Source of the DNA: Mobula birostris
Taxonomy: Eukaryota
NCBI RefSeq assembly: GCF_030028105.1
Contig: NC_092374.1
Location: forward strand, 175,422,057-175,486,056
DNA: 64,000 nucleotides
Direction of reading: 5' to 3'
The translations under genes were made by a program, and so were the position numbers. This document shows, piece by piece, positions 1-59,489 of the stretch. Position 1 is the first letter of the stretch; each line of letters starts with the position of its first letter. The notes beneath the pieces were generated by a model. That model was not told the DNA's origin, made no database searches, and was given only the letters and a program-made list of their open reading frames with translations.

Positions 1-1930
1 CTAGCAGAGGTAAGGCTCCGCGGTCAGGTCTCTGACACTAAGCCTGGTTCTGTGATTCAGAAGGGATGGAGAGGGGGAAGAAGAGGTGAGCAGTAATGAA
101 AAGGAAGCAGAGTTGCAGGAGGGATGGGAACCAGAGTGCCAGGGCAGATAGTGGAGTGGTTGCGGGAAAAGATGTTGTTGAGCCTACATACAAAGACAGG
201 AATTGAAAGGTTGAGCATGGGGGAGGGGAGGAATATTGTTCTGAGTGGCATCTATTTCAATGGAGGAGAATTGTAGGGGTGGCAGATGAGCTTAAATCAT
301 CTGAATTTTCATGTCAACACATGAAATTTTGACATCTTAGCTATTAGTGAGAGTTTGTTGCAAAAACAATAAACTGTGCAAATACAAAAAGAGAGAAAGG
401 AAAGCCTGACAGCTCAATGTTCTGGGATTTAGTTGAGTTAGATGTGATAGGGGGTGAGGTATTAAATGAGGAGGGGTAGCATTACTAGCCAGGGAAAATG
501 TCACAGCAAAACTCAATCAGGCCGGATAGGAAGGCTCCTCTACTGAGGCTGTATGGGTGGAACTGAGGACCATGTTAATAGAATTATCTGACAGACCACC
601 CAACAATCAGTCAATTTAGAGGAAGAAACTTGTAGTGAGATAGCGGACAGTTGCAAGTAAACTAAAGTTGTGAAATAGGTGATTTTAACTTTCCATATAT
701 TGACTGGGACTCCCATACTGTAAAAGGGCTGGATGGGATAGAGTTTATCAAATGTGTTTGAGAAACTTTGCTTAACCAGTTCACCCAGTTAAGGAGAGTG
801 CAATACTGGATCTACTATTAGGGAATGAGACAGGACAGGTAACAGAAGTTTGTGTAGGGGAACACTTTACATCCAGTGATATTAATGCCATTAGTTTCAA
901 AATAATTGTGGAGAAAGATAGGTCTGGTCCTGGGGCTGAGATTCTAAATAGGAAAAAGCCCTGTTCTGATGGCATCAGGAAGTACCTGGCAAGTGTGAAA
1001 TGGGATAGGTTGCTTTCAGGGAAAAGAATGCTTGGTAAGTGAGAGGCATTCAAAAGTGATCCTGGATGATAATATGGTAAACTGGGTGAAAAAAAATTGA
1101 GGATGACACCAAGATTGTGGGTGTAGTGGAAAGTGAGGAAGGCTGTCAAAGCATGCAGTGGGGTCTGGACCAGATGGAAAAATGACAGATGGAATTTAAT
1201 GCAGACAAATGTGAAGTATTGCACTTTGGGAGGACAGATCGGAATAGACTAACACAATGAATACTAGGACACTGAGGAGTATGGTAGGTCAGAGGGATCT
1301 GGGAACACAGATTTATAATTCCTTGAAAGTGGCATCATAGGTAGATAACTTTATGAAGAGCACTTCTCGCATATTGCCCTTCATAAATCAAAGTATGAGT
1401 ACAGAAAATGGGATGTTATGTTGAAGTTGTATAAGATATTGATGAGATCAAATTTGGAGAATTGTGTACCTACATGAAATATATCAATAATATTCAAAGA
1501 GTACAGAGAAAATTTAGATGGATGTATTTGGAACTTATGGACCTCTGCTACAAGAAAAGGTGGAATAAGTTAGGACTTTATTCCATGGAATGTAGATGAA
1601 TGAGATGAGATTTGATAGATGAATACCAAATTATATAAAAATGAAGGGTATTGGTAAGGTAAATACAAGCAGCATTTCCCCCACAGAGGTTTAGTGTGAC
1701 CGTAACCAGAAGTTACAGGTTATGGGGATCCTGAAGGGGAACTTCTTCACTCAGAGGGTGGTATGAATGTGGAATAAGCCGCCAGTGAAAGTAGTGAATG
1801 CAGGTTTGGTCGAAACATTTAAGAGAAGTTTCAAAAAGTACATGGATGGGAGGAGTATGGAGGGCTATGGTCCAGGTGCAGGCTTATGGGATTAGGGAAA
1901 ATAGTATGGCATGGTTAGTGTGATATGGGC
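1..1930 (+). mobile_element. Decayed CR1-clade LINE (endonuclease remnant, internal deletion, RT C-terminus, 3-prime end)
   Basis: DDTKI remnant gatgacaccaag near 1103, QMEFNADKCEVLHFG region, and a typical CR1 3-prime end. Confidence 0.8.
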
Positions 1931-1979
1931 TAGATGGACTAAAACTCTATGGAAGTCTCAATCCTGTAGCACTGATATT

Positions 1980-2395
1980 GATTTTTCTAACGTACAGTAA
2001 TCATTCCCATCAGTTTTCTATTTCCCCCTTTAACTTGTCTGTGGCAACCCTTCCCTTTCCAATCCCCTGCCCTCATGACCTGTCCATCACCTCTCTCTGG
2101 TTCCACTCACCCTTCCCTTTATTCCACTGTCCTCTCCTATCAGATTCTTTCTTCTTCAGACCTACTACTCTTTCATCTATCAGCTCCAAGTTTCTCACCC
2201 CTTTCTACCCTGACTCCACCCGGCCATCTTGCCCCTCACCTGGACTTACCTATTACCTGCCAGCTTGTGCTCCTCCCTTTCTACCTATTTTTTATGTCTT
2301 CTGTGCTCTTCCTTTCCATCCCTGACTAAGGGTCTCAGCCTGAATTGTCAATTGTTTATTTCCCTCCGCAGATGCTGCCTGAACTGTCAAGCTGT
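1980..2395 (+). mobile_element. Penelope-like element 3-prime fragment with degenerate hammerhead motif
   Basis: Pyrimidine-rich body ending in cctgactaagggtctcagcctgaattgtcaa...gatgctgcctga, shared with other copies in the window. Confidence 0.65.
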
Positions 2396-2399
2396 TCCC

Positions 2400-2690
2400 C
2401 CATTTATTTATTGAGATACAGCATAGAATAGCCCCTTCCAGCCCTTTGAGCCATGCCGTCCAGAAAATCTTCCGAGTTAATCCTTGTCTAATCAATGGGC
2501 CAATTTACAATGACCAATTAACCTACCAACTGGTACATCTTCGGAATGTGGGAGGAAACTTGAGCACCTGGAGGAAACCCATGCAGTCATGGGGAAAATT
2601 TACAAACTCCTTCTAGGTAGTGGTGGGATTTGAACCTGGGTCGCTGGTACTGTACAGTGTTGTGCTAGTCATTACACTAACATGCCACCC
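2400..2690 (-). mobile_element. tRNA-derived SINE (HE1/V-SINE-like)
   Basis: Core tgtgggaggaaac..gagcacctggaggaaacccatgcagtcatgggg and B-box-like ggatttgaacctggg. Family name is from knowledge, not a search. Confidence 0.7.
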
Positions 2691-2869
2691 CAGATTTTCA
2701 GTGTGTTGCTCCAGTTTTCCAGCATTACCTCTTCATTGACCAGGCTCTGACCCTGGACGAACTGACAGGCTCCATCCATTCCTTTGGGTCGAGTAAGACT
2801 CCTGGAAGTGACAGCTTACCGACTGGGTTGTATTCGGCTCTGTGGAACTGGATGGGCCCAGACCTACTG

Positions 2870-3890
2870 GAAGTGTACTTCTGTATGCTTCTAGCGGCAG
2901 CATGTCAGAATCCATGAGGAAGGGCATCATCATCTTTATCTACAAGCAGAAGGAGGAAAAGGAGGACATTAGGAATTGAAGGCCCATATCACTCCTTAAC
3001 GTCAACTACAAGATCCTGTCCAAGGCTATCGCCAACAGGGTCAGGTCTGCTCTGGGACAGGTGATCCACCTGAACCAAACCTGCGCTCTACCGGGCAGGA
3101 AGATCTCAGACAGCCTCGCGCTGCTGAGGGACACCATCGCCTACGTGCAGGACAGGGGGGTGGACGCCTGCCTGGTCAGCTTGGACCAGGAGAAAGCCTT
3201 CACCAGGATATCGCACACGTACATGGCGGACGTGCTCTCCAAAATGGGATTTGGGGAGGGAATCCGGAATTGGATCAGACTGCTCTACACAGACATCTGT
3301 AGTGCAGTTCAGGTCAACGGGTGGGAAACAGACAGCTTCCCCATCAGGTCTGGAGTCAGGCAGGGCTGTCCCCTCTCCCCTATCCTGTTTGTGTGCTGCA
3401 TTGAACTGTTTGCCGAAGCCATCAGGAAGGATGAGGACATAAGAGGGGTGATGCTGCCAGGCAGTGGAGGGACCCAATTGAAAACCTCCCCGTACATGGA
3501 CAATGTCACCATCTTCTGCTCTGATCCGAGGTCAGTTCGCAGATTGATTGGCATCTGCGACCAGTTTGAGCTGCCGTCAAGGGCCAGGGTCAACCGCACG
3601 AAGAGCGAAGCCATGCTCTTCGGCAACTGGCCCGACTGATCCAGTGTCCCCTTCACCATCAGGTCTGACCACATGAAGGTGTTGGGGATCTGGTTTGGAG
3701 GGGCTAAGGCATGCAATAAGAACTGGCAGGAGCGGACTGCCAAGGTGAAACAAAAACTGGGACCATGGGGAGGGCGCTCCCTGTCGATAACAGGCAAGAA
3801 CCTGGTCATCAGGTGTGAGGTGCTCTCAGGGCTACTATACTTGGCGCAGGTGTGGCCTGTCCCCCCACTCCTACAGCTCGGAAGTCACCT
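2870..3890 (+). mobile_element. Tx1-clade (L1-like) LINE, RT fragment
   Basis: ORF 3061-3639: LLRDTIAYVQDRGVDACLVSLDQEKAF...[13 protein letters not shown]...YMDN. Continues in 3673-3903. Truncated at both ends. Confidence 0.88.
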
Positions 3891-4219
3891 CACAAATAAA
3901 TAATTTTATTTTGAATAAAGTACATTTTGTTAAAAAAATAACCTGTTTGTTACTTTCTCAAAACATTTGTCAGGTAAGATCTTCCTTTAGTAGGCTGTGG
4001 ACCAAATGCTGACAAACGAGACTAGCTCAGGAAGGAATCATTGTCAGCTTGGATGAGCTGGGCCACAGGCCCTGTTTCTGTGTGGTATTACTCTGAAAAG
4101 CTGAGGAGTAGCACCTTGAAATACTTGAACAGGGTTGCAACTCTATGAGCATCTGCTTGACAACTAACAACACTGAACTACATTTAGGTACGATCATCAG
4201 TTTACTAATACTAATCTTA

Positions 4220-6190
4220 CATAGAAACATAGAAAATAGGTGCAGGAGTAGGCTATTCGGCCCTATAAGCTTGCACCGCCATTCAGTACGATCATGGCTG
4301 ATCATCCATCTCAGAACCCTGTACCTGCCTTCCCTCCATACCCCCTGATCCCTTTAGCCACAAGGGCCATATTTAACTTCCTCTTAAATATAGCCAATGA
4401 ACTGGCCTCAACTGTTTCCTGTGGCAGAGAATTCCACAGATTCACCACTCTCCGTGTGAAGAAGTTTTTCCTCATCTCGATCCTAAAAGGCTCCCCCTTT
4501 ATCCTCAAGCTGTGATCCCTTGCTCTGAACTTCCCCAACATTGGGAACAATCTTCCTACATCTAGCCTGTCCAACCCCTTTAGAATTTTATACGTTTCAA
4601 TAAGATCCCCCCTCAATCTTCTAAATTCCAGAGAGTATAAGCCTAACCGATCCAGTCTTTCATCATATGAAAGTCCTGCCATCCCAGGAATCAATCTGGT
4701 GAAGCTTCTTTGTACTCCCTCTATGGCAAGAATGTCTTTCCTCAGACTAGGGGACAAAACTGCACACAATACTCTAGGTGTGGTCTCACCAAGGCCTTGT
4801 ACAACTGCAGTAGTACCTCCCTGCTCCTGTACTCAAATCCTCTTGTTATGAATGCCAGCATACCATTCGCCTTTTTCACCGCCTGCTGTACCTGCATGCC
4901 CACTTTCAATGACTGGTGTACAATGACAGCCAGGTCTCGTTGCACCTCCCCTTTTCCTAATCGGCCACCATTCATATAATAATCTGTTTTCCTGTTCTTG
5001 CCACCAAAGTGGATAACCTCACATTTATTCACATTAAATTGCATCTGCCATGAATTTGCCCACTCACCTAACCTATCCAATTCACCCTGCATCCTCCTCA
5101 CAGCTAACACTGCCGCCCAGTTTCGTGTCATCCGCAAACTTGGAGATGCTGCATTTAATTCCCTCATCTAAGTCATTAATATATATTGTAAACAACTGGG
5201 GTCCCAGCACCGAGCCTTGCGGTACCCCACACATCACTGCCTGCCATTCTGAAAAGGTCCCGTTTATTCCCACTCTCTGCCTCCTGTCTGCCAACCAATT
5301 CTCTATCCACATCAATACCATACCCCCAATACCGTGTGCTTTAAGTTTGCACACTAATCTCCTGTGTGGGACCTTGTCAAAAGCTTTTTGAAAATCCAAA
5401 TATACCACATCCACTGGTTCTCCCCTATCCAATCTACTAGTTACATCCTCAAAAAATTCTATGAGATTCGTCAGACATGATTTTCCTTTCACAAATCCAT
5501 GCTGAGTTTGTCCAATCATTTCACCACTTTCCAAATGCGCTGTTATCACATCTTTGATAACTGACTCTAGCATTTTCCCTACTACCGGTCTATAATTCTC
5601 CGGTTTCTCTCTCCCTCCTTTTTTAAAAAGTGGGGTTACATTAGCCACCCTCCAGTCCTCAGGAACTAATCCAGAATCTAAAGAGTTTTGAAAAATTATC
5701 AGTAATGCATCCACTATTTCTTGTGCTACTTCCTTAAGCACTCTGGGATGCAGACCATCTGGCCCGGGGTATTTATCTGCCCTCAATCCCTTCAATTTAT
5801 CTAACACCACTTCCCTACTAACATGTATTTCCCTCAGTTCCTCCATCTCACTAGACCCTCGGTCCACTACTATTTCCGGAAGATTATTTATGTCCTCCTT
5901 AGTGAAGACAGAACCAAAGTAGTTATTCAATTGGTCTGCCATGTCCTTGTTCCCCATGATCAATTCACCTGTTTCTGACTGTAAAGGACCTACATTTGTC
6001 TTAACCAATCTTTTTCTTTTCACATATCTATAAAAGCTTTTACAGTCAGTTTTTATGTTCCCTGCCAGCTTTCTCTCATAATCTTTTTTCCCTTTCCTAA
6101 TTAAGCCCTTTGTCCTCCTCTGCTGGACTCTGAATTTCTCCCAGTCCTCAGGTGAGCCGCTTTTTCTGGCTAATTTGTATGTTTCTTCTT
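4220..6190 (-). mobile_element. 5-prime-truncated CR1 LINE, relatively young
   Basis: ORFs 5082-6023, 4742-5167 and 4311-4769 give the RT ([33 protein letters not shown]). (catagaaa)n tail at 4220. Confidence 0.95.
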
Positions 6191-6579
6191 TGTTACTTTG
6201 TTCATCTTACTACTGTTAGTATTGGCATTGTCTCTTCACATTTATATTCTTATTGAAAATTAAAAAGTTGGAAGTAGAGTTGATATTAAAATATGTATAT
6301 GTTACCACATACTACCTTGAGATTCATTTTCTTGGGGGCTTTTACAAGATAAAAAAAATAGAATTTTATGGAAAACTATACATAAACAAAGACTGGTGCA
6401 AAAGAAGACAAACTGTGCAAATAAACATAATACTGATAACATCAGTTATAAAGAGTCTGAAGGTGTGCCTGTATGTTATATAATTGGTTAGAGTAGTGGT
6501 GAATGAAATTACCTATGCCTGTTCAGGAGCCTAATGTTTGTAGGGTAATAATTATTCCTGAACCTGGTGGTGGGGGACC

Positions 6580-6770
6580 TAACAACACACACAAACTGCT
6601 GGAGGAACTCAGCAGGCCAGACAGCATCAATGGAAAAGAATAAACGGTCGATGTTTTAGGACAAGACCCTTCATCAAGACTGTTTACTCTTTTTCATAGA
6701 TGGTGCTTGGCCTGATGAGTTCCACTAGCATTTTGTGTGTGTTGCTTGGATTTCCAACATCTACAAATTT
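6580..6770. mobile_element. Short Penelope terminal-repeat hairpin remnant
   Basis: ctgctggaggaactcagcaggccag...ctggcctgatgagttccactagca inverted arms around a degenerate hammerhead. Confidence 0.65.
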
Positions 6771-6849
6771 CCTTTTGTTTGTGGTGTGGGACCTGGGGCT
6801 TCTATGGTCATGTTTGGTAATACCACAGTTATCATATGCCTGTTACAAA

Positions 6850-7830
6850 GACAAGAGATTGCAGATACTGGAATCTGGTGCAACACACAAAATGCTGGAG
6901 GATCTCAGCTGGTCAGGCAGCATCTGTGGAGGGAAATGAACAGAAAATATTTCTAGTCAAAATCCTTCAACTGGACTGAAAGAAAGAGTGGTATAGAGGT
7001 GAAGAGAAGGGTTGAATCCAGAGCTGGCAGACAAGAGATTTCTCCAGGTGACAATAGTATAAATAGATAGGGGAGGGAGTGAGAATGTTGTCAGAACCTG
7101 AGAGATGATAGGTGGAAATGAAGAAGTGATGAAGATAATGGAATCTGACAGGAGAAAAAGGGGAGCTGAAATACACAGAGGGAGGTAGGAGGCAAAACCA
7201 AAGGGAGGAGTGTGTGGGTGATGGAGATGGTGGGATAGGGAGAAGATTTAGAGTGATATGGGCTATGTGGATCATGAGGAGATTAAAAAGAGGCAGAGGG
7301 GAGGAGCTACCAGAAGACTGAGATTTCCACATTCATGAAATCAGGTTGGAGACTGCCCAGGCCGAATATGATGCCTTTCCTCTAATTTTCATTTACCATC
7401 AATTTGGAAGGAGTTGGAGGAGACTAAAGAAAGACAGGTGTGGAAATGGGAATTAAAACGTTTGGGAGCTGGGAGACCCAGATGCCAATGCCAGATGGCT
7501 TGCACCTGGTTTATGAAGTAATTACCCAGTCAGCTTCTGGTCTTACCAATGTAAAGGAGGCTGAACAGAAGTACCATGTGTAATAAACAAGGCTGGAGGA
7601 TTTGTATGCAAATATCTGCCTCGCCTGCAAAGTCTGTTTGTAGTTTTGTAGAGTAATGAGGGAGGAGGTGTGGAGACAGGTGTAACACTTCTTGTTGGTA
7701 CAGAGGGCGGTGCATGGGTGGGAGAAAGAAAAGGGATGGATGGGGAGAGCTGAATGGACCGGAGAATAACACCTTATGGAAAGGGAAATGGGGAGAGAAA
7801 ACTATGGTTGGTGATGGGATCATGTTTTGA
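6850..7830 (-). mobile_element. Penelope-like fragment
   Basis: Terminal caacacacaaaatgctggaggatctcagc, purine-rich body and decayed endonuclease-side sequence, similar to 24770-26470. Confidence 0.65.
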
Positions 7831-7879
7831 AGCATTTTGTGTTCCAGTTAGGTATTCTACAACACAGCAGTCTGAACAA

Positions 7880-8285
7880 TGAACAATTTCTGGTAACCAT
7901 TCCCCCTCTGGCATTTTTCCTTTTTGCCCAGATCTATCTGCCCATTATCACCCTATCTCTTTCCCTTTTCCCCTCCCTCTCCCTATCATCAACACACTCC
8001 TACCACCAGTTCCTTTCCTATCAGATTCCATCATTTTAACTCTTGTGTCACCTGCACCTTTCACCTCCCAGCTTCTGTCACTATTCCCACTTCATCTGCC
8101 TATGAATCCCCACTCACCTCAATCCACCTATCGTCTGCTAGCTCTTGTCCCACCTGCTTATGCTGGCCAACTTCCTACTTATCTTTCAGTGTTGATGAAG
8201 GGTGACTGCCGAAACATTTACTGTACGTTTCTCTCCGCAGATATTTCCTGATCTACCACGTTCCTCCAGCACCTGATATGTTGTT
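7880..8285 (+). mobile_element. Penelope-like 3-prime fragment abutting the MHC promoter
   Basis: Ends in cagtgttgatgaagggtgactgccgaaacatttactg (mutated hammerhead core) and ttcctccagca. Confidence 0.65.
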
Positions 8286-8288
8286 GTT

Positions 8289-8296
8289 ATTTGCAT
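8289..8296 (+). promoter_or_regulatory. Octamer motif ATTTGCAT (Oct1/Oct2 site)
   Basis: Perfect match, upstream of the Y-box array. Confidence 0.5.
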
Positions 8297-8341
8297 AATA
8301 TATTTGGCCACATATAGAATTAATAGTCTGTGTCTGGCTGT

Positions 8342-8500
8342 GATTGGTGGGTTTTACATCATTGTAATTGCCACTACTTTGCTAAGCAGAGGGTGATTGG
8401 TTTTTCTCTGGCCGGCTGTGATTGGTTTTCCTCTGCCTGACTCTGATTGGTATTCCTCTGGCCGGCTGTGATTGGCTTGTCTGCACCCAGTTGTGATTGG
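8342..8500 (+). promoter_or_regulatory. Array of inverted CCAAT (Y-box/NF-Y) motifs
   Basis: GATTGG at 8342, 8395, 8420, 8445, 8470 and 8495. The last five are exactly 25 bp apart within a degenerate tandem unit (tttt(c)ctctggccggctgtgattgg). Confidence 0.85.
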
Positions 8501-8518
8501 TTTGTTCTGCCGGCTCCC

Positions 8519-8526
8519 TATTTAAA
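8519..8526 (+). promoter_or_regulatory. TATA-like box TATTTAAA
   Basis: Lies 19 nt after the last Y box and 52 nt before the ATG. Confidence 0.65.
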
Positions 8527-8570
8527 GCATGAGTGCCGCTCTACTTCCGTAGTTTCACAAGTGTTTAACA

Positions 8571-8667
8571 ATGACAGACGGGGTTGTTTGGCTGCGCGTC
8601 CTGGGATTCAGGGGAACGGTTCTCCTCTGCATTGCGCTCTTCCTCAGCCAGCGGAAAGCCAGGGTCG
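8571..8667 (+). CDS. mhc2b: MHC class II beta exon 1, signal peptide (MTDGVVWLRVLGFRGTVLLCIALFLSQRKARV-G)
   Basis: ATG 45 nt after TATTTAAA, hydrophobic core TVLLCIALFL, donor G|GTAAGT at 8668. Phase 1 matches the exon 2 acceptor. Confidence 0.82.
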
Positions 8668-9999
8668 GTAAGTACTGGAGTGTATCGTCGCTCTGGAATT
8701 GTCCCAGCTCAGGGATGCCTGTCACCTCTGTAGCAAACAGAAATCGCCTACGTACTGAATGGGTCCGATAGTACGCGTAGAAGCAAAGGATTGTCGGCAT
8801 TTCGGGTCGCAGCGCTGCACGTTAACAGTCCCTCGGCGCTTTTTGCTCTAAAATCCAGTTCTTGAGTCTCCCTGTGAATGGTCCTGTCTCGACGCCCTGC
8901 TCATCATCCCCCGCCGGGTCTCGAGGTTCTCCAACGGTTCTCGTTCTCGTTCCACTGAGAAGTTAGGCAAAACGTATCTGGGTTGTGTGAGGAAAGACAG
9001 CAAATAATCCATGGAATGCTGCATTTGGCTCTATTTGTAAATTATATCCCTGTTATGACTAAATCGCCACGGTTCTCTAAAGAGCTCTAATCGCTCACGC
9101 ACGCTCTAGTTTATTTTAGACTAAAATAGCATTAGATTAAGACTGGTCTCCTTTGCTTTGATCCTTGAGAGAATATTGTAAATTTAACATCTCATTCTTT
9201 CAATTTCTGGAAATTTTTAGCGCAATGGGTCAGTACCTCTCTATTTTCTCAGTTATGAATGGGATTCTATTTGTTGTTCTAATCCAGGGATCATTTCCAA
9301 AGCAGGAAGCTAGAGAGTCCAGTGTGCAGTCATCTTCCAAAGCTTGATGTAGACCACTGGCTCTTGAGATTTGTTGTGTTCAATCTTGCATTTTCAGACT
9401 ACTGTATTTGAAATATAAATTCCAAAAAGAAAACGCATGGGTATCTGGGTGCCTTGAGTGCATGGTTTGTGCATGTTACTGTGTAGGTATGATAATTAGT
9501 CAAAAAACAATGTTATTTATTGTGCATTAGTGAAAATAAACCTGGGAGATTATACTTAATTTGTGGTGTCTTGGGGTAATGAGGTGACTCTGAACCAGAT
9601 GGTGATCACAGATGAGGCAAGTAGTTTTGTCTTGTGATCACAATACACAAACTTGTAGAATATAGAGACATGTCTTGCAAACTGGCTTTTGTGGAAGTGG
9701 AGATGATTGTAGTGTGTTGTCTACAATGAAGATTTTACAAGGCAACTTGTAGGCTGATTGAAATGGTTAAGCCATACAACATCCATCATGATTGGTAGAT
9801 TATATTCAAAATTGGATTGGTCATAGAAAATGACTGACTTGGTTTCAGTATTGACCAGTGAGAAGTACCTCGATATTTTAGGACAGTGTAAAACAGGCTG
9901 GTATACTTGAAGGAGGATGTGCCAGAAGGGGCAAAGTTGGTCCACTGGGAGTTCAGAGTGATAATCCATGTGTGGAGCTAAAAGGGGTGATTTTATTTT

Positions 10000-11400
10000 T
10001 TGCATCTGTATTTACTCAGGAGATGGACAGTTTATAGAAGTGAGGCAAAGCAGCATCAAATTAATGGTCCCTATACAGATTAGAGAAGGTGCTTGCAGTC
10101 CTGAGGCAAATTAAGGTGGTACAATCCCCCAGGGCCTGACAAGGTATTCCAATGGACCTGGGGGAGGCAAGAAATTGCTGGGGCTTAGCAGAGATATTTA
10201 AATTATCCTTGGCAACAGCTGAGGTACCAAAGGATTGGAGGATAGCCAGTGTTCTGTTCAAGAAAGGCTTTTTTTAAAAAAAACCTTGAAATTATAGACC
10301 AGAGATCCTGACGTCAGTAGTGGGAAAGCTATCAGAAGACATTCTGAGGGACAGGAAATACATGTATTTAGATAAACATTAAGGAAAGCTGGCATAGCTT
10401 TGTTGAAAGTTGTACTTTTATACTTTGTTGCCAAACAATTGGTACTACAATGTACAATCATCACAGTGATATTTGATTCTGTGCTTCCCACTCCCTTGAT
10501 TACAAATATTAAATATTAAAAATATTTAAAATAGTAAAAATTAGTAAATTATAAAAAAATTAAATTATAAATCATAAATAGAAAATAGAAAAATGGAAAG
10601 TAAGGTAGTGCAAAAAAACCAGGAGGCAGGTCCGGATATTTGGAGGGTATGGCCCAGATCCGTTCAGCAGTCTTATCACAGTTGGAAAGAAGCTGTTCCC
10701 AAATCTGGCCATATGAGTCTTCGAGCTCCTGAACCTTCTCCTGGAGGGAAGAGGGATGAAAAGTGTGTTGGTTGGGTGGGTTGTGTCCTTGATTATCCTG
10801 GCAGCACTGCTCCAACAGCGTGCGGTGTAAAGTGAGTCCAAGGATGGAAGATTGGTTTGTGTGATGTAGGCAAGGCAGCAGGTTTTGTCTACAGACTTTA
10901 GCAAGGCATTTGACAAGGTCCTGCATGGGAGGTTCAAGAAAATTCTTTTGCACAGGATTTAAGATGAGGTAGTGAATTTGATTAGGTAGGGTGGGAGAAG
11001 CCAGAGTGGTAGTAAATGGTTGCCTTTCTGACTGGAGGCCTGTCATAGGGATCGGTGGTGGGTCTGTTATTGTTTGTCATGTATATCACTGATTTGGATG
11101 ACAGTGTGCATGGAGTCCAGTGGACAGGGAGGAAGACTATCATGGCTTTCAGTAGGATGTGGATCAGGTTGGCAAATGGACTGGAAAAATGGCACATGAA
11201 ATTTAATGCAGGTGAGTGTGAGGTGTTGCACTTCAGTAGGACCAACCACAATAGGATTACAATGAATGGCAGAGTACTGAGTGGTAGAACAAAATGATTC
11301 GGGAATAGAGATCTGTAATTCATTGAAAGTGGTGTCACATGTACATGGGGTTGTAAAGAATGCTTTTGGCACGTTGACCTTCATGAAATAAGTTTTGAGT
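10000..11400 (+). mobile_element. Decayed CR1 RT, interrupted at about 10403-10867
   Basis: KSPGPD, DFSKAFDK, GLLLFVMYITDLD and MKFNAGECEVLHF remnants. Confidence 0.8.
10403..10867 (-). mobile_element. Rex1/Babar-type LINE 3-prime fragment
   Basis: HPTNTLFIPLPSRRRFRS...RFGNSFFPTVIRLLNG and a (tatactt)n tail. Close copy at 60803-61250. Confidence 0.8.
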
Positions 11401-22004: not shown

Positions 22005-22271
22005 GGGCGAACTCTGTTTACCACAGGCAGGGCTGTCTGTTTAACAGTAGTGCCACCGGAGATGGACCTTCTTCTATCAGGATTACTACAACAGAGAGCT
22101 GATTTTCCTACTATGACTTTGACCAGAAGAAGTTTGTGGCAGCAAAGCCATGGATGCGGGGGAATGGGGACAGGTGGAACAAGGCTGAAGCGGGCAGCGA
22201 CGTACCAGGGCGGGATCCGTGTGTGTGAGAACAACATCCCATTGTTGAAAAATGGGTGCTGCCCCGGAGAG
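22005..22271 (+). CDS. mhc2b: MHC class II beta exon 2, beta1 domain, disrupted by 4 single-base indels
   Basis: Acceptor tctttcttccag, donor G|GTAAGT at 22272. Repaired reading: GANSVYHRQGCLFNSSATG(E)WTFFYQDYYNRELI(S)YYDFDQKKFVAAKPWMRGNGDRWNKAEA(x)ATYQGGIRVCENNIPLLK(x)WVLPRR, with both Cys, the NSS glycosylation site, WN and CxxN. In-frame TGA at 22100-22102 and 22226-22228 as assembled. Confidence 0.9.
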
Positions 22272-23204: not shown

Positions 23205-23730
23205 GCAATGCTCTGCAGATGCTGGGGTCAAAGCAACACTCACAACATACTGGAGGAACTCAGCAGGTCGGGCAGCATCCGTGGAAACGATCAGTCAATG
23301 TTTCAAGCCGGAACTCTTCGTCAGGACTGAAGAGGGAAGGGGCAGAGGCCCAATAAAGAAGGTGGGGGGAGGGTGGGAAGGAGGAGGCTGGTAGGTTCCA
23401 GGTGAAAAACCAGTAAGGGGAAAGATAAAGGGGTGGGGGAGGGGAAGCAGGGAGGTGACAGTCAGGAAAGGTGAAGAAGGAATAGGGGAAAACACAATGG
23501 GTAGTAGAAGGAGGCAGAACCATGAGGGAAGTGATAGGCAGCTGGGGGAGGGGGCAGAGTGAAATAGGGGAAGGGAATTACCAGAAGTTGAAGAATTATG
23601 TTCATACCAAGGGGCTGGAGACTACCTAGACAGTATACCCCCTCTTCAGTCCTGACGAGGGGTTCCAACCTGAAACGTTGACTGATCGTTTCCACGGATG
23701 CTGCCTGACCTGAGTTCCTCCAGTGTGTTG
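23205..23730. mobile_element. Penelope-derived element with inverted terminal repeats (about 23250-23337 vs 23640-23722)
   Basis: ggaggaactcagcaggtcgggcagcatccgtggaaacgatcagtcaa...ggactgaagaggg is the reverse complement of cctcttcagtcc...ttgactgatcgtttccacggatgctgcctgacctgagttcctcc. Confidence 0.85.
23646..23685 (+). ncRNA. Minimal type I hammerhead ribozyme motif (Penelope-associated)
   Basis: TCAGTC-CTGACGA-GGGGTTCCAACCT-GAAAC-GTT-GACTGA: 6-bp stem I, CUGANGA core, stem II, GAAA, palindromic ACGU stem III and GUH triplet. Activity not shown. Confidence 0.7.
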
Positions 23731-27750: not shown

Positions 27751-28035
27751 TTGAACCCGAGATCACCATCCGACCTAAAGTCTCGCCCTCCCAGTCAGGG
27801 CAGTTGGCCCTGCTCACCTGTCATGTCACTGGGTTTTACCCTCCGGAGATTGAAGTCAAGTGGCTGAAGAACGGAGCCCCAGTCCCCGCTGGAGCCATCA
27901 ATACGGTCCTGTTGTCAGATGGTGATTGGACGTACCAGGTGGAGGAACTCCTGCAGTATGACCCAGTGACTGGGGATAAATACACCTGTCACGTGGAGCA
28001 CAGCAGCCTGACCGAGCCCATGACCATGGACTGGG
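27751..28035 (+). CDS. mhc2b: MHC class II beta exon 3, beta2 Ig C1 domain
   Basis: VEPEITIRP...LLTCHVTGFYPPEIEVKWLKNG...DGDWTYQ...YTCHVEHSSL...DW. Acceptor tctcctccag, donor G|GTAAGT, 285 nt, open frame. Confidence 0.97.
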
Positions 28036-32772: not shown

Positions 32773-32889
32773 AAGTGCAGATCACGCCAGAATCGGAGAG
32801 AACAAAGATCATTGTGGGAGCATTGGGATTTGTGCTTGGGCTGCTCATCCTACTGGCAGCAGTTATAATGAAGCTGAAGAATGCTAAAG
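32773..32889 (+). CDS. mhc2b: MHC class II beta exon 4, connecting peptide and transmembrane helix
   Basis: EVQITPESERTKIIVGALGFVLGLLILLAAVIMKLKNAK, with the class II beta GxxGFVLGL motif. Acceptor cag at 32770-32772, donor G|GTGAGC. Confidence 0.94.
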
Positions 32890-35800: not shown

Positions 35801-36218
35801 GAAATTATAAATCAGTGAGTCTTCAGTGGTTGGTCAGCTGATGGAGAAGATCCTGAGAGGCAGGATTTATGAACATTTGGAGAGGCATAATGATTAGGAA
35901 TAATCAAGGTTTTGTCAAATTTGCATTGAATTTTTTGAGGACGTGACTAAACACATTAAAGGTAGAGCTGTAGATGTAGTGTATATGGATTTTAGCAAGG
36001 CATTTGATAAGATACCCCATGCAAGACTTATTGAGACAGTAAGGAGGCATGGGATCCAAGGGGACTTTGCTTTGTGGATCCACAATTGGCTTGCCTTCAG
36101 AAAGCAAAGAGTGGTTGTAGATGGATCATATTCTGCATGGAGGTCAGTGACTAGTGTTGTGCCTCAGGGATCTGTTCTGAGACCCCTACTCTTTGATTTT
36201 TTTTTTTTAAATATAAAT

Positions 36219-39200
36219 TTTTGTATCCATGGGGATAAAACAGGTAAATTATTGGCTAACCAAATTAAAAATATTAGTGCTAAACAGCAGATTAAAGAAA
36301 TTTATAAACTTAACGGTACTAGGACAACTGATCATTTAGAAATAAATGATACTTTTAGAGAATATTATTCTAAACTTTAGCTCTGATCTTAAAGATATTA
36401 TAATGGATAACTTTTTAGACCAAATAAATATCCCTATGCTTTCTGATGACAGAAAACAGTTGGATCAGTATTTCTGATGAAGAAATAGCCGAAGCTGTAC
36501 GTTCATTGTACTCGGAAAGCTCCAGGTCCTGACGGATTTTCTGGAGGATTTTATAAGGCTTTTTCTTCCTTGCTTATACCCCATTTATGATCAGTTCTTT
36601 CAGATTCTTTTAAGTTAGGTAGGTTACTGCAATCCTTTTACGAAGCTTCTATTTCACTTTCAGAAGAATAAGAATCCAACTGAATGTTCTTCATATAGAC
36701 CAATTTCTTTACTTAATGTTGATGCTAAAATTTTAGCTAAAATTCTGGCCCGTTGAATGGAAAATCTTACCATCTGTCATTTCTGATGATCGGACTGGCT
36801 TTATTAAAAATTGATATTCTCATTTTATTCACCAATTATTAAATCTTCTAAAGAGATATCGGAATGTGTGATATCCTTAGATGCTAAGGAGGCTTTTGAT
36901 CGGGTAGAATGGCATTATTTAAAATTTTAGAAAAATTTAATTTTGGGTCCAACTTTATTCAATGGATTAAATTACTGGATTTATCTCCTTTTGCTTGGGT
37001 TCTTACTAACTCTTAGAATTCTAAACCATTTAAACTTCAATGTGGAACCAGACAAGGTTGCCCTTTGAGTCCTTTGCTCTTTGACCTGGCTTTAGAACCT
37101 TTAGCTATTGCTTTGAGAATCTAACGATATCACTGGTATTTTACGGAAGGGTACTATCCGCAAAGTTTCACTTTAGAAATGTAAAGCAATAAATTTGCAT
37201 AACGTCGAAACTTCATTACCTTCTGTGCTTTCTTTACTATCCTGCTTTAGTCAATTTTCTGGATATAAACCGAACCTACACAAGTGTGAACTTTTCCTTT
37301 TGAATAATTTGCCATTAACTGATAATAACCATCCTTTTAAAATTGTAAGAAACCAATTCACTTATTTGGGTGTAACAATTACTAAGAACTATAAACACAA
37401 AGTAAAAAAATTTCTTTAAATAAATTGTATAAAAAGAACATTATCAAATTGGTCACCCTTTTCATTATCATTGATTGGCCAAATTAATTCTATTAAAATG
37501 AATGTTTTACCTAAATTCATATACCTCTTTCAGGCATTACCAGTTTTTACTCCTAAATCCTTTTTTTGACACTCTGGACTATTTTATCTTCCTACATATG
37601 GGGAAAAATAAATGTCCTCGACTGAATAAAGTCCATCTCCAGAAAGTTAAAGAATGGAGGTTTAGCCTTACCAAATTTTACATTTTATTACGTGAATTGA
37701 TTATGGGGAGCAAGGACATGGCAGACCAATTGAATAATTACTTTGGTTCTGCCTTCACTAAAGAGGACATAAATAATCTTCTAGAAATAGTAGGGGACAG
37801 AGGGTCCAGTGAGATGGAGGAACTGAGCGAAATACATGTTAGTAGGGAAGTGGTGTTAGGTAAATTGAAGGGATTAAAGGTGGATAAATCCCCAGGGCCA
37901 GATGGTCTGCATCCCAGAATGCTTAAGGAAGTAGCCCAAGAAATAGTGGATGCATTAGTGATAATTTTTCAAAACTTTAGATTCTGGACTAGTTCCTGAG
38001 GATTGGAGGGTGGCTAATGTAACCCCACTTTTTTAAAAAAGGAGGGAGAGAAACTGGGGAATTAGACCAGTTAGCCTAACATCAGTGGTGGGGAAACTGC
38101 TAGAGTCAGTTATCAAAGATGTGATAACAGCACATTTGGAAAGTGGTGAAATCATCAGACAAAGTCAGCATGGATTTGTGAAAGAAAAATCATGTCTGAC
38201 GAATCTCATAGAATTTTTTGAGGATTTAACTAGTAGAGTGGATAGGGGAGAACCAGTGGATGTGGTATATTTGGATTTTCAAAAGGCTTTTGACAAGGGC
38301 CCACACAGGAGATTAGAGTGCAAACTTAAAGCACATGGTATTGGGGGTATGGTATTGATGTGTATAGAGAATTGGTTGGCAGACAGGAAGCAAAGTGGGA
38401 ATAAATGGGACCTTTTCAGAATGGCAGGCAGTGACTAGTGGGGTACTGCAAGGGCTCAGTGCTGGGACCCCAGTTGTTTATAATATATTAATGACTTGGA
38501 TGAGGGAATTAAATGCAGCATCTCCAAGTTTGCGGATGACACGAAGCTGGGTGGCAGTGTTAGCTGTCAGGAGGATGCTAAGAGGATGCAGGGTGACTTG
38601 GATAGGTTAGGTGAGTGGGCAAATTCATGGCAGATGCAATTTAATGTGGATAAATGTGAAGTTATCCACTTTGGCGGCAAAAACAGGAAAACAGATTATT
38701 ATTTGAATGGTGGCCGATTAGGAAAAGGGGAGGTGCAACAAGACCTGGGTGTCATTATACACCAGTCATTGAAAGTGGGTATGCAGGTCAGCAGGCGACG
38801 AAAAAGGCAAATGGTATGCTGGCATTTATAGCAAGGGGATACGAGTACAGGAGCAGGGAGGTACTACTGCAGTTGTACAAGGCCTTGGTGAGACCACACC
38901 TGGAATATTGTGTGCAGTTTTGGTCCCCTAATCTGAGGAAAGACATCCTTGCCATGGAGTACAAAGAAGGTTCACCAGATTGACTTTTGGGATGGCAGGG
39001 CTTTCATATGATGAAAGACTGGATGAACTAGGCTTATACTCGTTGGAATTTAGAAGATTGAGGGGGGATCTGATTGAAATGTATAAAATCCTAAAAGGAT
39101 TGGACAGGCTAGATGCAGGAAGATTGTTCCTGATGTTGGGGAGGTCCAGAATGAGGGGTCACAGTTTGAGGATGAAGGGGAAGCCTTTTAGGACCGAGAT

Positions 39201-40862
39201 GAGGAAAAACTACTTCACACAGTGGTGAATCTGTGGAATTCTCTGCCACAGGAAACAGTTGAGGCCAGTTCATTGGCTATATTTAAGAGGGAGTTAGATA
39301 TGGCCCTTGTGGCTAAAGGGATCAGGGGGTATGGAGGGAAGGCTGGTGCAGAGTTCTGAGTTGGATGATCAGCCATGATCATACTGAATGGTGTTGCATG
39401 CTCGAAGGGCTGAATGGCCTACTGCACCTATTTTCTATGTTTCTGTGTTTCTATTACTGGGCAGCTAATATACAGAATCTCACGTTTTGGTTATACTATA
39501 TTAACCATGAGGACTGTCCCAGGTGGGTTTCTTTAGAAACTAACTTGGTTAATAAATTTTCTATTATCTCCCTATTGGAATCTTCACTTTCTTTATCCTT
39601 GAGCAAGATAACTGAAAATGTGGAAGTCAAACATACTTTAAGGATTTGGATACAATTTGGAAAACACTGGTTTATTGAGATTCTCCCTTTCTAGTCCTTA
39701 AATTTTTTTTTTTAAGCCTTCTATGACTGTAGTCTTTAAACATTGGGAAGGATTGGGCATTACATGTTTTCAGGATCTGTTTGTAGGAGGATGTCTGTCT
39801 TTGTTTGAACAATTGTCAATTAAATACAGTTTACCCAAAACTTTTTTTTTGTACTTACAAATCAGATTTTCTGAGATCTCAATTATATACATTTCCCAAT
39901 AGATCTGATAAGAACATATTAGATGAAATTCTTAATATGAAACCATTCTATAGTGGTTCAATATCCAATATTTATGATGTTGGGAATGAGAAATGATTCT
40001 TTAGACAAGATTAAGAATCATTGGGAACAAGATTTACAGACCTCAATTTCTGAAGAAACTTGGAATGAAATTTTTAAATTGGTTAATACTTCATTACTAT
40101 GTGCTTGTCATTCCCTCCTACAATTTAAAGTGGTTCATAGGGCTTATATGACAAAGGATAAATTATCTTGTTTTTATAGAGATATATCTCCCTATTGTGA
40201 TAGATGTAACAATGGAGAAGCTTCACTTATTCATATGTTTTAGACTTGTCCAAGTCTTAGAAAGTATTGGAAGGAAAATTTAAACTTTTTCTGTACTCAA
40301 AGTAAATTTTAAGCTTAATCCTTTGACTGCCCTATTTGGTATTGTTGGAAGCAAAGATATCATTTTGAGGACATCTGATCTGAACATTCTGGCTTTTATC
40401 TCTCATGGCTAGAAGGGCACTTCTGTTTAAATGGAAGGATGCTGTTCTGCCTAATCATGCCCGGTGGTTATGGGATGTTATGGCATGCCTAAATTTAGAA
40501 AAGATTCATTTCTCCATTTCTGAATCTAACCAAGATTTTCAAAATCTGTGGGGGCTGTTTTTAAATTATTTTCATAATCTTTGATTTCTTGTTAAAGTAC
40601 AGAAGGTGGTTAGTAGTACATTTATTATCTGAAAATTTTCTTTGTCCCAAATAGCTTTGGCTTTGGTAGTGGGTGTAGATCTTTTTCTTTTCTTAAAATT
40701 GTTTATATTCCAATATGAACTAATCTATCCATATGAATATAGAGTAAGGAGTTCATTAATGTGATTTAATATACTATATTTGGTATTTTTGTTTTATAAT
40801 GTATTCTCTTGAACTCTTGATTTCTATATACAAGAATACAATCAATAAAAATATTGAAAAAG
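36219..40862 (+). mobile_element. 5-prime-truncated L1-clade LINE with TSD aatataaat, split by a CR1
   Basis: [66 protein letters not shown] at 40844-40849. TSD at 36210-36218 and 40863-40871. Confidence 0.9.
37692..39451 (+). mobile_element. 5-prime-truncated CR1 inserted in the L1, TSD tattac
   Basis: tattac at 37686-37691 and 39452-39457. The L1 frame LPNF..YYWAAN is restored on removal. Tail ttctatgtttctgtgtttc. Confidence 0.93.
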
Positions 40863-45018: not shown

Positions 45019-45048
45019 CTATTCTGGATTCCAGCAGTCACGGCCCAC
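45019..45048 (+). CDS. mhc2b: MHC class II beta exon 5, cytoplasmic tail microexon (AILDSSSHGP-R)
   Basis: 30 nt, acceptor ctttctctttcag, donor C|GTGAGT. Phase 1 at both ends joins exons 4 and 6 in frame. Resembles shark class II beta tails as recalled, not searched. Confidence 0.85.
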
Positions 45049-45707: not shown

Positions 45708-45733
45708 GTCTGATGGGCCCACAAATCAGTTAA
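45708..45733 (+). CDS. mhc2b: MHC class II beta exon 6, end of tail (R-LMGPQIS*)
   Basis: Acceptor ctctccatcctctgttccag, then GT CTG ATG GGC CCA CAA ATC AGT TAA (stop 45731-45733). Confidence 0.85.
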
Positions 45734-59200: not shown

Positions 59201-59489
59201 TAACCCTTTCCAAAGATGCTGCCTGGCCTGCTGAGCTCCTGCAGCATTTTGTGTGTGTTGCTCGGATCTGCAGAGGCACGGCCCCACTCCCTCTGTTGTT
59301 GATGCAGCTGGTGTGCCTGGGATAGGGATAAGTAGAGGAGTTGAAGGAAGGCAGAGAAGGGTAAATGTCCATTGCAGAACTGTGAGAGGGACAACACTGC
59401 AGATGCTGGATGTCTGAAATAAAGAAGAATGCTGGAAATACCCATCAGGTCAGGCAGTGGCTGTGGGGAGTAGACCTGAACTCATATTA

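What the first reader, a model, noticed from the sequence alone, without database searches (positions are those of the whole stretch)
8342..8526. MHC class II promoter built from a 25-bp tandem array of Y boxes
Directly seen: GATTGG starts at 8395, 8420, 8445, 8470 and 8495 (exact 25-bp period), plus one at 8342, followed by TATTTAAA. The units (tttttctctggccggctgtgattgg / ttttcctctgcctgactctgattgg / tattcctctggccggctgtgattgg / cttgtctgcacccagttgtgattgg) diverge in the spacer, but TGATTGG and unit length are invariant, which suggests selection on motif and spacing. Described class II promoters have a single Y box. A multi-NF-Y minisatellite could be a lineage-specific way to drive class II, and copy-number variation could tune expression between alleles. 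The functional part is inference.
Basis: partly seen in the sequence, partly recalled or inferred. Interest (0 to 1): 0.78.

Follow-up and report, generated by a model that had tools for sequence, protein, structure and literature searches.

The report
Tandem Y-box promoter of ray MHC-II beta
The promoter of a manta-ray MHC class II beta gene is a tandem array of 25-bp units, each with one CCAAT/Y-box motif, placed just before a TATA box, and the same design occurs in a sawfish and two sharks but not in a gar, so it looks like an old, selected and undescribed variant of the class II promoter.

Summary
GATTGG starts at 8342, 8395, 8420, 8445, 8470 and 8495. TRF calls a 25-bp x 5.0 array at 8393-8515. 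TATTTAAA lies at 8519-8526.

The array sits directly upstream of the leader exon (ATG 8571, donor after 8667) of a six-exon class II beta gene. The closest protein is from Mobula hypostoma.

RNA contigs cover 8565-8668 at very high depth, show nothing over 8178-8555, and continue into the beta1 exon 13 kb downstream. A template-switch 5' end in a related species places the start about 20 nt before the ATG, near 8551.

The design recurs at class II beta genes elsewhere:
- Sawfish: 8 units.
- Zebra shark: 4 units.
- Whale shark gene 2: 3 units.
- Whale shark gene 1: a degenerate version.
- Gar: a single Y box.

Within the manta and sawfish arrays TGATTGG has no substitutions, while spacers differ at 22-30% of positions (P about 1e-6). 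A 25-bp spacing falls in the 24-27 bp class preferred by human NF-Y on double CCAAT sites. NF-Y binding and any dosage effect of copy number are untested.

One caveat: in this assembly the beta1 exon has four frame-breaking indels.

Verdict: a real, conserved promoter and a new variant of a known kind.

The parts
8341..8347 (+). Outlying upstream Y-box motif (TGATTGG, an inverted CCAAT), 53 nt before the array
   Evidence: family D2 aligns its flank with the array units
8367..8371 (+). Degenerate unit core (ATTGC), 24 nt after the 8343 core and 29 nt before the next one
8393..8515 (+). Tandem array of five 25-bp units, each with an invariant TGATTGG (cores at 8394, 8419, 8444, 8469, 8494). Spacers differ from the consensus at 30% of positions
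8519..8526 (+). TATA box TATTTAAA, 23 nt after the start of the last ATTGG. The same octamer and the same linker are present in sawfish
8551..8551 (+). Inferred transcription start (A in tAGTTT), 32 nt after the first T of the TATA box and 20 nt before the ATG
   Evidence: Inference (template-switch 5' end AGTT... 22 nt before the ATG in a related species; no RNA depth up to 8555, contigs from 8565)
8571..8667 (+). Exon 1: leader peptide (32 codons plus 1 nt, phase 1), donor G|GTAAGT
   Evidence: 30 of 32 residues shared with the Mobula hypostoma leader; spliced contigs
22005..22271 (+). Exon 2: beta1 (peptide-binding) domain, 267 nt, with four frame-breaking indels relative to other elasmobranch beta1 exons (DNA) and the M. 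hypostoma protein
27751..28035 (+). Exon 3: beta2 Ig C1 domain, intact
32773..32889 (+). Exon 4: connecting peptide and transmembrane region, intact
45019..45048 (+). Exon 5: cytoplasmic segment (AILDSSSHGP)
45708..45733 (+). Exon 6: last codons (LMGPQIS) and the stop codon

Best explanation
This is the proximal promoter of a classical-type MHC class II beta gene of a manta-type ray. Five perfect units, and up to seven traceable ones, each carry an inverted CCAAT box of the class II Y-box type (CTGATTGGTT-like). They are repeated every 25 bp and end 23 nt before a TATA box, which places transcription start near 8551, 20 nt before the ATG. The most likely mechanism is as follows. Each unit binds one NF-Y trimer. 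A 25-bp period lets neighbouring trimers sit side by side, so the array forms a 125-200 bp NF-Y platform. That platform keeps the promoter free of nucleosomes and recruits co-factors (RFX5/CIITA-type partners, Sp-type factors) and the TATA-directed initiation machinery. Unequal exchange changes the unit number (3 to 8 among the genes seen) while selection keeps the motif in every unit. Shown here: the location, transcription, splicing, conservation and motif-specific constraint. Inferred: NF-Y occupancy, co-factor recruitment and any dosage effect of copy number.
For: Anatomy of the array and TATA box.

Gene identity: the beta2 exon is 81-85% identical to ray class II beta proteins. The leader and all exons line up with Mobula hypostoma P0163.

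Transcription: contigs at depth 1500-11000 cover 8565-8668. Depth is zero over 8178-8555. Loose ends at 8668 read the first bases of the beta1 exon. Two transcript contigs of a related species begin, right after the template-switch oligo, 22 nt before the ATG with AGTT, matching AGTT at 8551.

Conservation: sawfish has 8 cores at spacings 24, 25 x6 followed by the same linker and TATTTAAA. Zebra shark has 4 cores at exactly 25 bp, and whale shark gene 2 has 3 at exactly 25 bp. Between manta and sawfish, the array plus TATA box (78% over 136 bp) and exon 1 are the only conserved stretches within the 3.1 kb of manta and 3.5 kb of sawfish sequence compared around exon 1.

Constraint: core mismatches are 0 of 35 against 27 of 90 spacer mismatches in manta (P 3.8e-6), and 0 of 56 against 32 of 144 in sawfish (P 7.7e-7).

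Outgroup: gar has one Y box.

Literature: human NF-Y-bound double CCAAT sites peak at 24-27 and 36 bp and never lie closer than 19 bp. RFX5, Sp1/2, FOS, IRF3 and PBX3 land on such modules without their own motif (PMC4889920).
Against: No binding or reporter data exist for any of these arrays. The period of a tandem repeat is preserved by the repeat mechanism itself, so a constant 25 bp alone does not prove selection on spacing. Whale shark gene 1 has an irregular version (spacings 96, 31, 25, 52) and still appears intact. The copy in this window has a beta1 exon with four frame-breaking indels, and only 29% of that exon's sampled words occur in RNA runs of the same species. The very high exon 1 signal may therefore come partly from a paralogue or another allele. 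No X or S box was found near the array in the two rays, so a link to the CIITA pathway is not shown.
Confidence: 0.75

Rival explanations
1. Only the TATA-proximal Y box works. The other units are a neutral minisatellite that grew from it by slippage, and the conserved period simply reflects how tandem repeats propagate.
For: Copy number varies freely (3, 4, 5-7, 8). The zebra shark and whale shark gene 2 units are 98-100% identical, which indicates recent expansion. Whale shark gene 1 has irregular spacing.
Against: In the older, diverged manta and sawfish arrays the spacers have drifted by 22-30% while no TGATTGG has a single change (P about 1e-6). Homogenisation alone would not produce that pattern. 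Arrays are present at every elasmobranch class II beta promoter that could be read (4 species, 5 genes).
Confidence: 0.12
2. In this genome copy the promoter is a relic attached to a disabled class II beta pseudogene. The abundant exon 1 RNA comes from a functional paralogue with the same leader.
For: Four frame-breaking indels and in-frame stops in exon 2. Only 0.29 of the exon 2 words are held in RNA runs of the same species.
Against: Exon 1 contigs in run X3 are 99-100% identical to the window, and their loose ends read the window's own exon 2 start. An intron 1 contig identical to the window is also present (9298-9400). All other exons and all splice sites are intact. The four indels sum to zero in the most polymorphic exon, which could also be a consensus error of the assembly. 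Even if this reading is true, it does not change what the element is.
Confidence: 0.3
3. The repeated motif is read by a factor other than NF-Y (for example a TALE/PBX-type TGATTG reader or a lineage-specific protein), so the resemblance to the Y box is superficial.
For: The invariant block is 7 nt (TGATTGG), longer than the CCAAT pentamer. No binding data exist.
Against: Whale shark gene 2 units read CGATTGG, and some whale shark gene 1 and distal zebra shark cores have other flanks. The part common to all cores is ATTGG, that is CCAAT. The flanks fit the mammalian NF-Y preference (established knowledge). The spacing falls in the NF-Y double-site class (PMC4889920).
Confidence: 0.08
4. The array is part of a dispersed repeat or transposon that happens to lie before the gene.
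For: The region is rich in LINE and SINE debris. A dispersed-repeat tail lies just upstream of the arrays in the two shark loci.
Against: No other copy exists in the 64-kb window. In 151 kb of other elasmobranch and gar loci, GATTGG triplets at 25 bp occur only at the class II beta promoters. The two other ATTGG runs found lie in LINE reading frames and are not tandem repeats.
Confidence: 0.04

Closest known systems
Mammalian MHC class II proximal promoter (S-X-X2-Y module, CIITA enhanceosome)
   Same: It lies just upstream of a class II gene. The Y box is an inverted CCAAT of the CTGATTGG type, on the same strand as the gene and within about 50-200 nt of the start.
   Different: There are three to eight Y boxes in a 25-bp tandem array instead of one. 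A strong TATA box is present. No recognisable X1/X2 or S box lies at fixed distance in manta or sawfish. The described class II promoters carry S, X and Y once each, conserved in sequence and position (PMC2192087, PMC6155461).
Double or multiple CCAAT promoters bound by NF-Y (human G2/M and other genes; the Mrps12/Sarsm array of four CCAAT boxes)
   Same: Several CCAAT boxes lie in the proximal promoter. The 25-bp spacing falls in the preferred 24-27 bp class, and in human cells such modules recruit RFX5, Sp1/2, FOS and IRF3 (PMC4889920; PMC1802594).
   Different: Those boxes are separate sites in unique sequence, usually two to five. Here the sites are units of a true minisatellite with an exact period, species-specific spacers and changing copy number, and they sit at an immune gene.
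ERV9/LTR12 U3 tandem repeats carrying CCAAT motifs bound by NF-Y
   Same: A tandem repeat in which each unit carries an NF-Y site and which acts as a promoter or enhancer. The repeat structure is recalled from memory. NF-Y binding at LTR12/ERV9 elements is mentioned in PMC4889920.
   Different: That repeat is a retroviral LTR dispersed in thousands of copies, with longer units and extra motifs. Here the array is single-copy in the window, tied to one gene family and conserved across species.
Motif duplications in cetacean class II promoters (T-box duplication in dolphin DQA)
   Same: A duplicated regulatory motif inside a class II promoter (PMC6155461).
   Different: That is a single recent duplication of a different motif in a few species, not a Y-box array shared across an old vertebrate lineage.

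Membership tests
MHC class II proximal promoter (SXY type) | Lies directly upstream of the transcription start of a class II alpha or beta gene | tested here: met
   Leader exon at 8571-8667 of a class II beta gene. RNA coverage starts after the array and is spliced to beta1.
MHC class II proximal promoter (SXY type) | Y box: an inverted CCAAT (CTGATTGG type) on the gene strand | tested here: met
   Six TGATTGG motifs at 8341-8500. The same motif is present in four other elasmobranch promoters and in gar.
MHC class II proximal promoter (SXY type) | X1/X2 boxes at a fixed short distance upstream of the Y box | tested here: not met
   No match to the X1 core with up to 2 mismatches within 1.6 kb upstream of the ATG in manta, and none within 2 kb in sawfish. 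The two manta matches lie at -1650 and -1699, far from the array. No conserved block upstream of the array between the two rays. X-like motifs exist far upstream in whale shark gene 1 (-413, -545) and next to the single Y box in gar. The X consensus was recalled from memory, so a diverged X box could have been missed.
MHC class II proximal promoter (SXY type) | S/W box upstream of X | tested here: inconclusive
   No conserved upstream block between manta and sawfish. No specific S-box search was made.
MHC class II proximal promoter (SXY type) | Dependence on CIITA and RFX | not testable with these tools
   Needs transfection, ChIP or knock-out.
Multi-CCAAT NF-Y promoter module | Two or more CCAAT boxes in the proximal promoter at 24-27 (or about 36) bp, never under 19 bp | tested here: met
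   Spacings of 25, 25, 25, 25. The reference distances are from PMC4889920.
Multi-CCAAT NF-Y promoter module | Flanks fitting the NF-Y matrix (RRCCAATSR) | tested here: met
   Read on the CCAAT strand, the units are AACCAATCA, AGCCAATCA or TACCAATCA. The matrix is established knowledge and was not computed here.
Multi-CCAAT NF-Y promoter module | Occupancy by the NF-Y trimer | not testable with these tools
   Needs EMSA, footprinting or ChIP.
Promoter minisatellite (VNTR) | Head-to-tail units with copy number differing between genes or species | tested here: met
   TRF arrays: 5.0 copies in manta, 6.6 (8 cores) in sawfish, 3.6 in zebra shark, 3.4 in whale shark gene 2.
Promoter minisatellite (VNTR) | Copy number polymorphic between individuals or haplotypes | not tested
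   Only RNA-type runs were found, and they do not cover the array.

The most novel reading that the evidence does not exclude
In sharks and rays the class II beta promoter does not use the canonical single S-X-X2-Y enhanceosome. Instead it uses a close-packed row of NF-Y sites at a 25-bp period, kept for roughly 250-300 million years while the spacer sequence and unit number turn over. The row recruits RFX5/CIITA-type co-activators through NF-Y alone (X-box independent), and unit number acts as an evolvable dial for class II expression between genes and alleles.
Probability: 0.25. Interest if true: 0.82.

Novelty: new variant of a known kind. Interest (0 to 1): 0.66.

Why it matters
Class II promoters are the textbook case of a rigid, position-fixed enhanceosome (S, X, X2 and Y, once each). 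A whole old vertebrate lineage whose class II beta genes instead carry 3-8 Y boxes at an exact 25-bp period, followed by a TATA box and with no evident X box in rays, would show that this architecture is not universal among jawed vertebrates. It also offers a natural series (3, 4, 5, 8 units, one fixed period, free spacers) for asking three questions: how many NF-Y trimers can sit side by side, whether a multi-NF-Y platform can replace the X box in recruiting CIITA/RFX, and whether promoter copy number tunes MHC expression. In practice, the array plus TATA box marks the true first exon of elasmobranch class II beta genes. Public gene models miss it in places, with a spurious N-terminal extension in sawfish and an upstream ATG in whale shark.

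Tried and rejected
**X-box search.** I searched for the X1 core (GCAACAGATG, up to 2 mismatches, both strands, 2 kb upstream). Nothing lay near the arrays in manta or sawfish, and only distant matches appeared in whale shark gene 1 and zebra shark. A blastn comparison of manta and sawfish flanks found no conserved block other than the array, TATA box and exon 1.

**Dispersed-repeat idea.** This is rejected for the sampled DNA. Two extra runs of ATTGG at about 25 bp (L004 32423, L005 minus strand 1128) lie in LINE reverse-transcriptase frames and are not tandem repeats.

**Intron 1 pair.** The GATTGG pair at 9790 and 9815 shows no unit similarity.

**Promoter DNA that could not be fetched.** Mobula hypostoma, Hypanus sabinus and Mustelus asterias: file too large. 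The Rhinoraja 273-aa gene: range too long. Latimeria: not on record.

**Class II alpha.** No alpha-chain exon lies in any fetched locus, so alpha promoters were not examined.

**Sequencing runs.** The searches gave only RNA-type contigs, so copy number between individuals could not be compared. The exon 2 word share (0.29) cannot separate a pseudogene from an assembly error or from allelic polymorphism.

**Literature.** Searches for a description of shark or ray class II promoters found none. The species behind SRR13269339 was not identified.

Full report
**1. Observation**

GATTGG starts at 8342, 8395, 8420, 8445, 8470 and 8495, and TGATTGG one base earlier at each. The four quoted units match the sequence.

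Tandem Repeats Finder reports a 25-bp array of 5.0 copies at 8393-8515 with 72% matches. The repeat finder gives start-to-start spacings of 25, 25, 25. TATTTAAA occupies 8519-8526.

Three GATTGG at exact 25-bp spacing occur three times in the window, all inside this array, and never in 100 dinucleotide-preserving shuffles. A degenerate core (ATTGC, 8367) lies between the outlying motif at 8342 and the array, so up to seven units can be traced.

**2. The gene behind it**

An ATG at 8571 opens a 97-nt leader exon that ends at a G|GTAAGT donor after 8667, in phase 1. A beta2-type Ig C1 exon lies at 27751-28035.

A search of 1.8 billion representative proteins with that exon gave ray class II beta chains at 81-85% identity. 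A second search returned full-length class II beta chains of many sharks and rays.

The closest is Mobula hypostoma P0163. Its leader matches the window's at 30 of 32 residues, and its C-terminal exons match those of the window. Earlier notes of this scan call the genome giant manta ray.

The gene has six exons: 8571-8667, 22005-22271, 27751-28035, 32773-32889, 45019-48 and 45708-33. All splice sites are canonical.

**3. Transcription**

Contigs of four public runs were laid on 7800-9400.
- Depth is zero from 8178 to 8555.
- Depth is 1500-11000 over 8565-8668.
- At 8668 the contigs continue with letters that are the first bases of exon 2, 13.3 kb downstream, so these are spliced RNAs.
- Run X3 (organism B; 16 of its 25 laid contigs at 99% or more) reads the window's own exon 2 start.
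- Runs X1, X2 and X4 (organism A, a few per cent diverged) read the P0163-type start.
- Low-depth unspliced contigs cover intron 1.

Contigs cannot give an exact 5' end. However, two transcript contigs of a related elasmobranch (L001, L002) begin with the end of a template-switch oligo followed by AGTT..., 22 nt before the ATG. The oligo was recognised from memory. The window has AGTT at 8551, 20 nt before its ATG and 32 nt after the first T of the TATA box. The promoter reading therefore fits on position, on transcription and on TATA-to-start geometry.

**4. Comparison with other species**

- Sawfish (Pristis pectinata, L004): eight ATTGG cores at spacings 24, 25, 25, 25, 25, 25, 25. They are followed by the same 18-nt linker (14 of 18 identical) and the same TATTTAAA, 55 nt before the leader ATG.
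- Zebra shark (Stegostoma, L006): four cores at exactly 25 bp and then TATTTAAA. An older module of three cores at 25 bp with TATATAA lies about 375 bp further upstream.
- Whale shark gene 2 (L007): three cores at exactly 25 bp and then TATTTAAA.
- Whale shark gene 1 (L005): five ATTGG at spacings 96, 31, 25, 52 and then TATATAAA.
- Spotted gar (L008): one ATTGG in the 500 nt before the ATG, preceded at 16 nt by an X-like motif, and no TATA box.

Across the eight fetched loci (about 160 kb), GATTGG triplets at 25 bp occur only at these promoters.

**5. Constraint**

Within the manta array the 7-nt core has 0 mismatches in 35 positions, while the spacers have 27 in 90 (P = 3.8e-6 if the rates were equal). 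In sawfish the counts are 0 of 56 against 32 of 144 (P = 7.7e-7).

The manta and sawfish consensus units agree at 18 of 20 non-core positions, so the ray array is inherited. The shark units share only 10-11 of 20 with the ray unit and with each other.

Between manta and sawfish, blastn over the 3.1 kb of manta and 3.5 kb of sawfish sequence compared around exon 1 finds only the array plus TATA box (78% over 136 bp, E = 3e-27) and exon 1 with the first bases of intron 1. Internal units show no one-to-one orthology, and sawfish units resemble each other more, which indicates some homogenisation. The zebra shark and whale shark gene 2 units are 98-100% identical, so those arrays expanded recently.

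The picture is a promoter minisatellite that turns over in spacer sequence and unit number. It keeps the CCAAT core in every unit and keeps the 25-bp period.

A caution applies to the period. A tandem repeat keeps its period by the way it propagates. The constant 25 bp is therefore weaker evidence of selection than the invariant core.

**6. Mechanism**

The core and flanks read as good NF-Y sites. On the CCAAT strand the units are AACCAATCA or AGCCAATCA, against the mammalian preference RRCCAATSR (established knowledge). They also resemble the class II Y box.

In human ChIP-seq data, NF-Y-bound regions with two CCAAT boxes show distance peaks at 24-27 and 36 bp, and no pairs lie closer than 19 bp. 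Those double modules are the landing sites of RFX5, Sp1/2, FOS, IRF3 and PBX3 in the absence of their own motifs (PMC4889920). A 25-bp period is therefore a spacing at which NF-Y trimers are known to sit side by side.

Five to eight units span 125-200 bp, about one nucleosome's length, directly before the TATA box. I infer a multi-NF-Y platform that keeps the promoter open and recruits co-activators. This was not tested.

**7. Is it an SXY promoter?**

The location and the Y motif are met. The X1/X2 boxes were looked for and not found near the arrays in the two rays. X-like motifs lie far upstream in whale shark gene 1 and next to the single Y box in gar.

I therefore do not file this as a canonical SXY module. 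It works like a Y-box/NF-Y promoter and belongs with multi-CCAAT modules, in the form of a minisatellite.

**8. Caveat on this copy**

DNA alignment of exon 2 with sawfish, whale shark and a ray mRNA shows four indels (-1, +1, -2/+1, -1) that break the frame and create stops, although the exon length stays a multiple of three. Another first-reader note had flagged this (s1-145780).

Only 0.29 of the exon's sampled words are held in RNA runs of the same species. That share fits a pseudogene with an expressed paralogue. It also fits allelic polymorphism of beta1, or consensus errors in a heterozygous polymorphic exon. The promoter reading does not depend on which holds, but the claim that this copy makes a working protein does.

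**9. Novelty**

Full-text searches found no description of shark or ray class II promoters or of Y-box arrays in class II genes. The described class II promoters carry S, X and Y once each (PMC2192087, PMC6155461).

Multi-CCAAT promoters and NF-Y-binding tandem repeats are known, so this is a new variant of a known kind. It is made more interesting by its conservation across rays and galeomorph sharks, a split of roughly 250-300 million years (from general knowledge).

**10. Limits**

Promoter DNA of Mobula hypostoma, stingray, skate and other shark orders could not be fetched. No chimaera (holocephalan) protein or locus was sought. Class II alpha promoters were not seen. Variation between individuals could not be examined.

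Noticed in passing
window 22005-22271: The beta1 exon has four frame-breaking indels (net zero) relative to sawfish, whale shark and a ray mRNA, while every other exon and splice site of the gene is intact. Only 0.29 of its sampled words are found in RNA runs of the same species. It could be a pseudogene, an assembly consensus error in a polymorphic exon, or an unusual allele.
   Followed up: partly
L003 12755-13342 (mirrored at about 2100-1550 on the other strand): In the skate Rhinoraja longicauda, a 45-bp x 13.5 tandem repeat is built from the last codons of the beta2 exon plus its splice donor (HSSLAEPKAMDWGKV-type units). It lies inside a large inverted duplication of the class II beta locus whose centre lies near the beta1 exon.
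   Followed up: partly
L006 1476-1540: Zebra shark carries a second, older promoter-like module (three ATTGG at 25 bp plus TATATAA) about 375 bp upstream of the active-looking array, separated from it by a dispersed-repeat insertion. Its units resemble those of whale shark gene 1.
   Followed up: partly
L004 3001-3651 and 27891; L007 2001 and 2053: Public gene models seem to mis-place the start. The sawfish model adds about 190 residues from an exon 25 kb upstream, although a TATA box lies 55 nt before the true leader ATG. The whale shark gene 2 model starts at an ATG only 14 nt after the TATA box, probably upstream of the transcription start.
   Followed up: partly
L004 27634-27818: TRF scores a 75-bp (three-unit) higher-order period slightly above the 25-bp period in the sawfish array, with alternating GGCTCC and GGTTCC units.
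   Followed up: no
window 8529-8552: A short ATG-initiated frame (ATG AGT GCC ... TAG) lies between the TATA box and the inferred start. It is probably not transcribed.
   Followed up: no
window 9790 and 9815: Two GATTGG lie 25 bp apart in intron 1 with no similarity to the array units. This is most likely chance.
   Followed up: yes
window 6904-6926, 23259-23281, 59213-59235; L005 about 2660-2710; L006 about 1595-1650: A dispersed-repeat tail (CAGATGCTGCCAGACCTGCTGAG-like) shared by manta and sharks lies immediately upstream of the promoter arrays in both shark loci. Three copies are scattered in the window.
   Followed up: partly
window 3061-6023, 35943-39228, 51356-53892: Several LINE reverse-transcriptase and endonuclease fragments fill the flanks and introns, which explains the 37-kb span of a 273-codon gene.
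   Followed up: no
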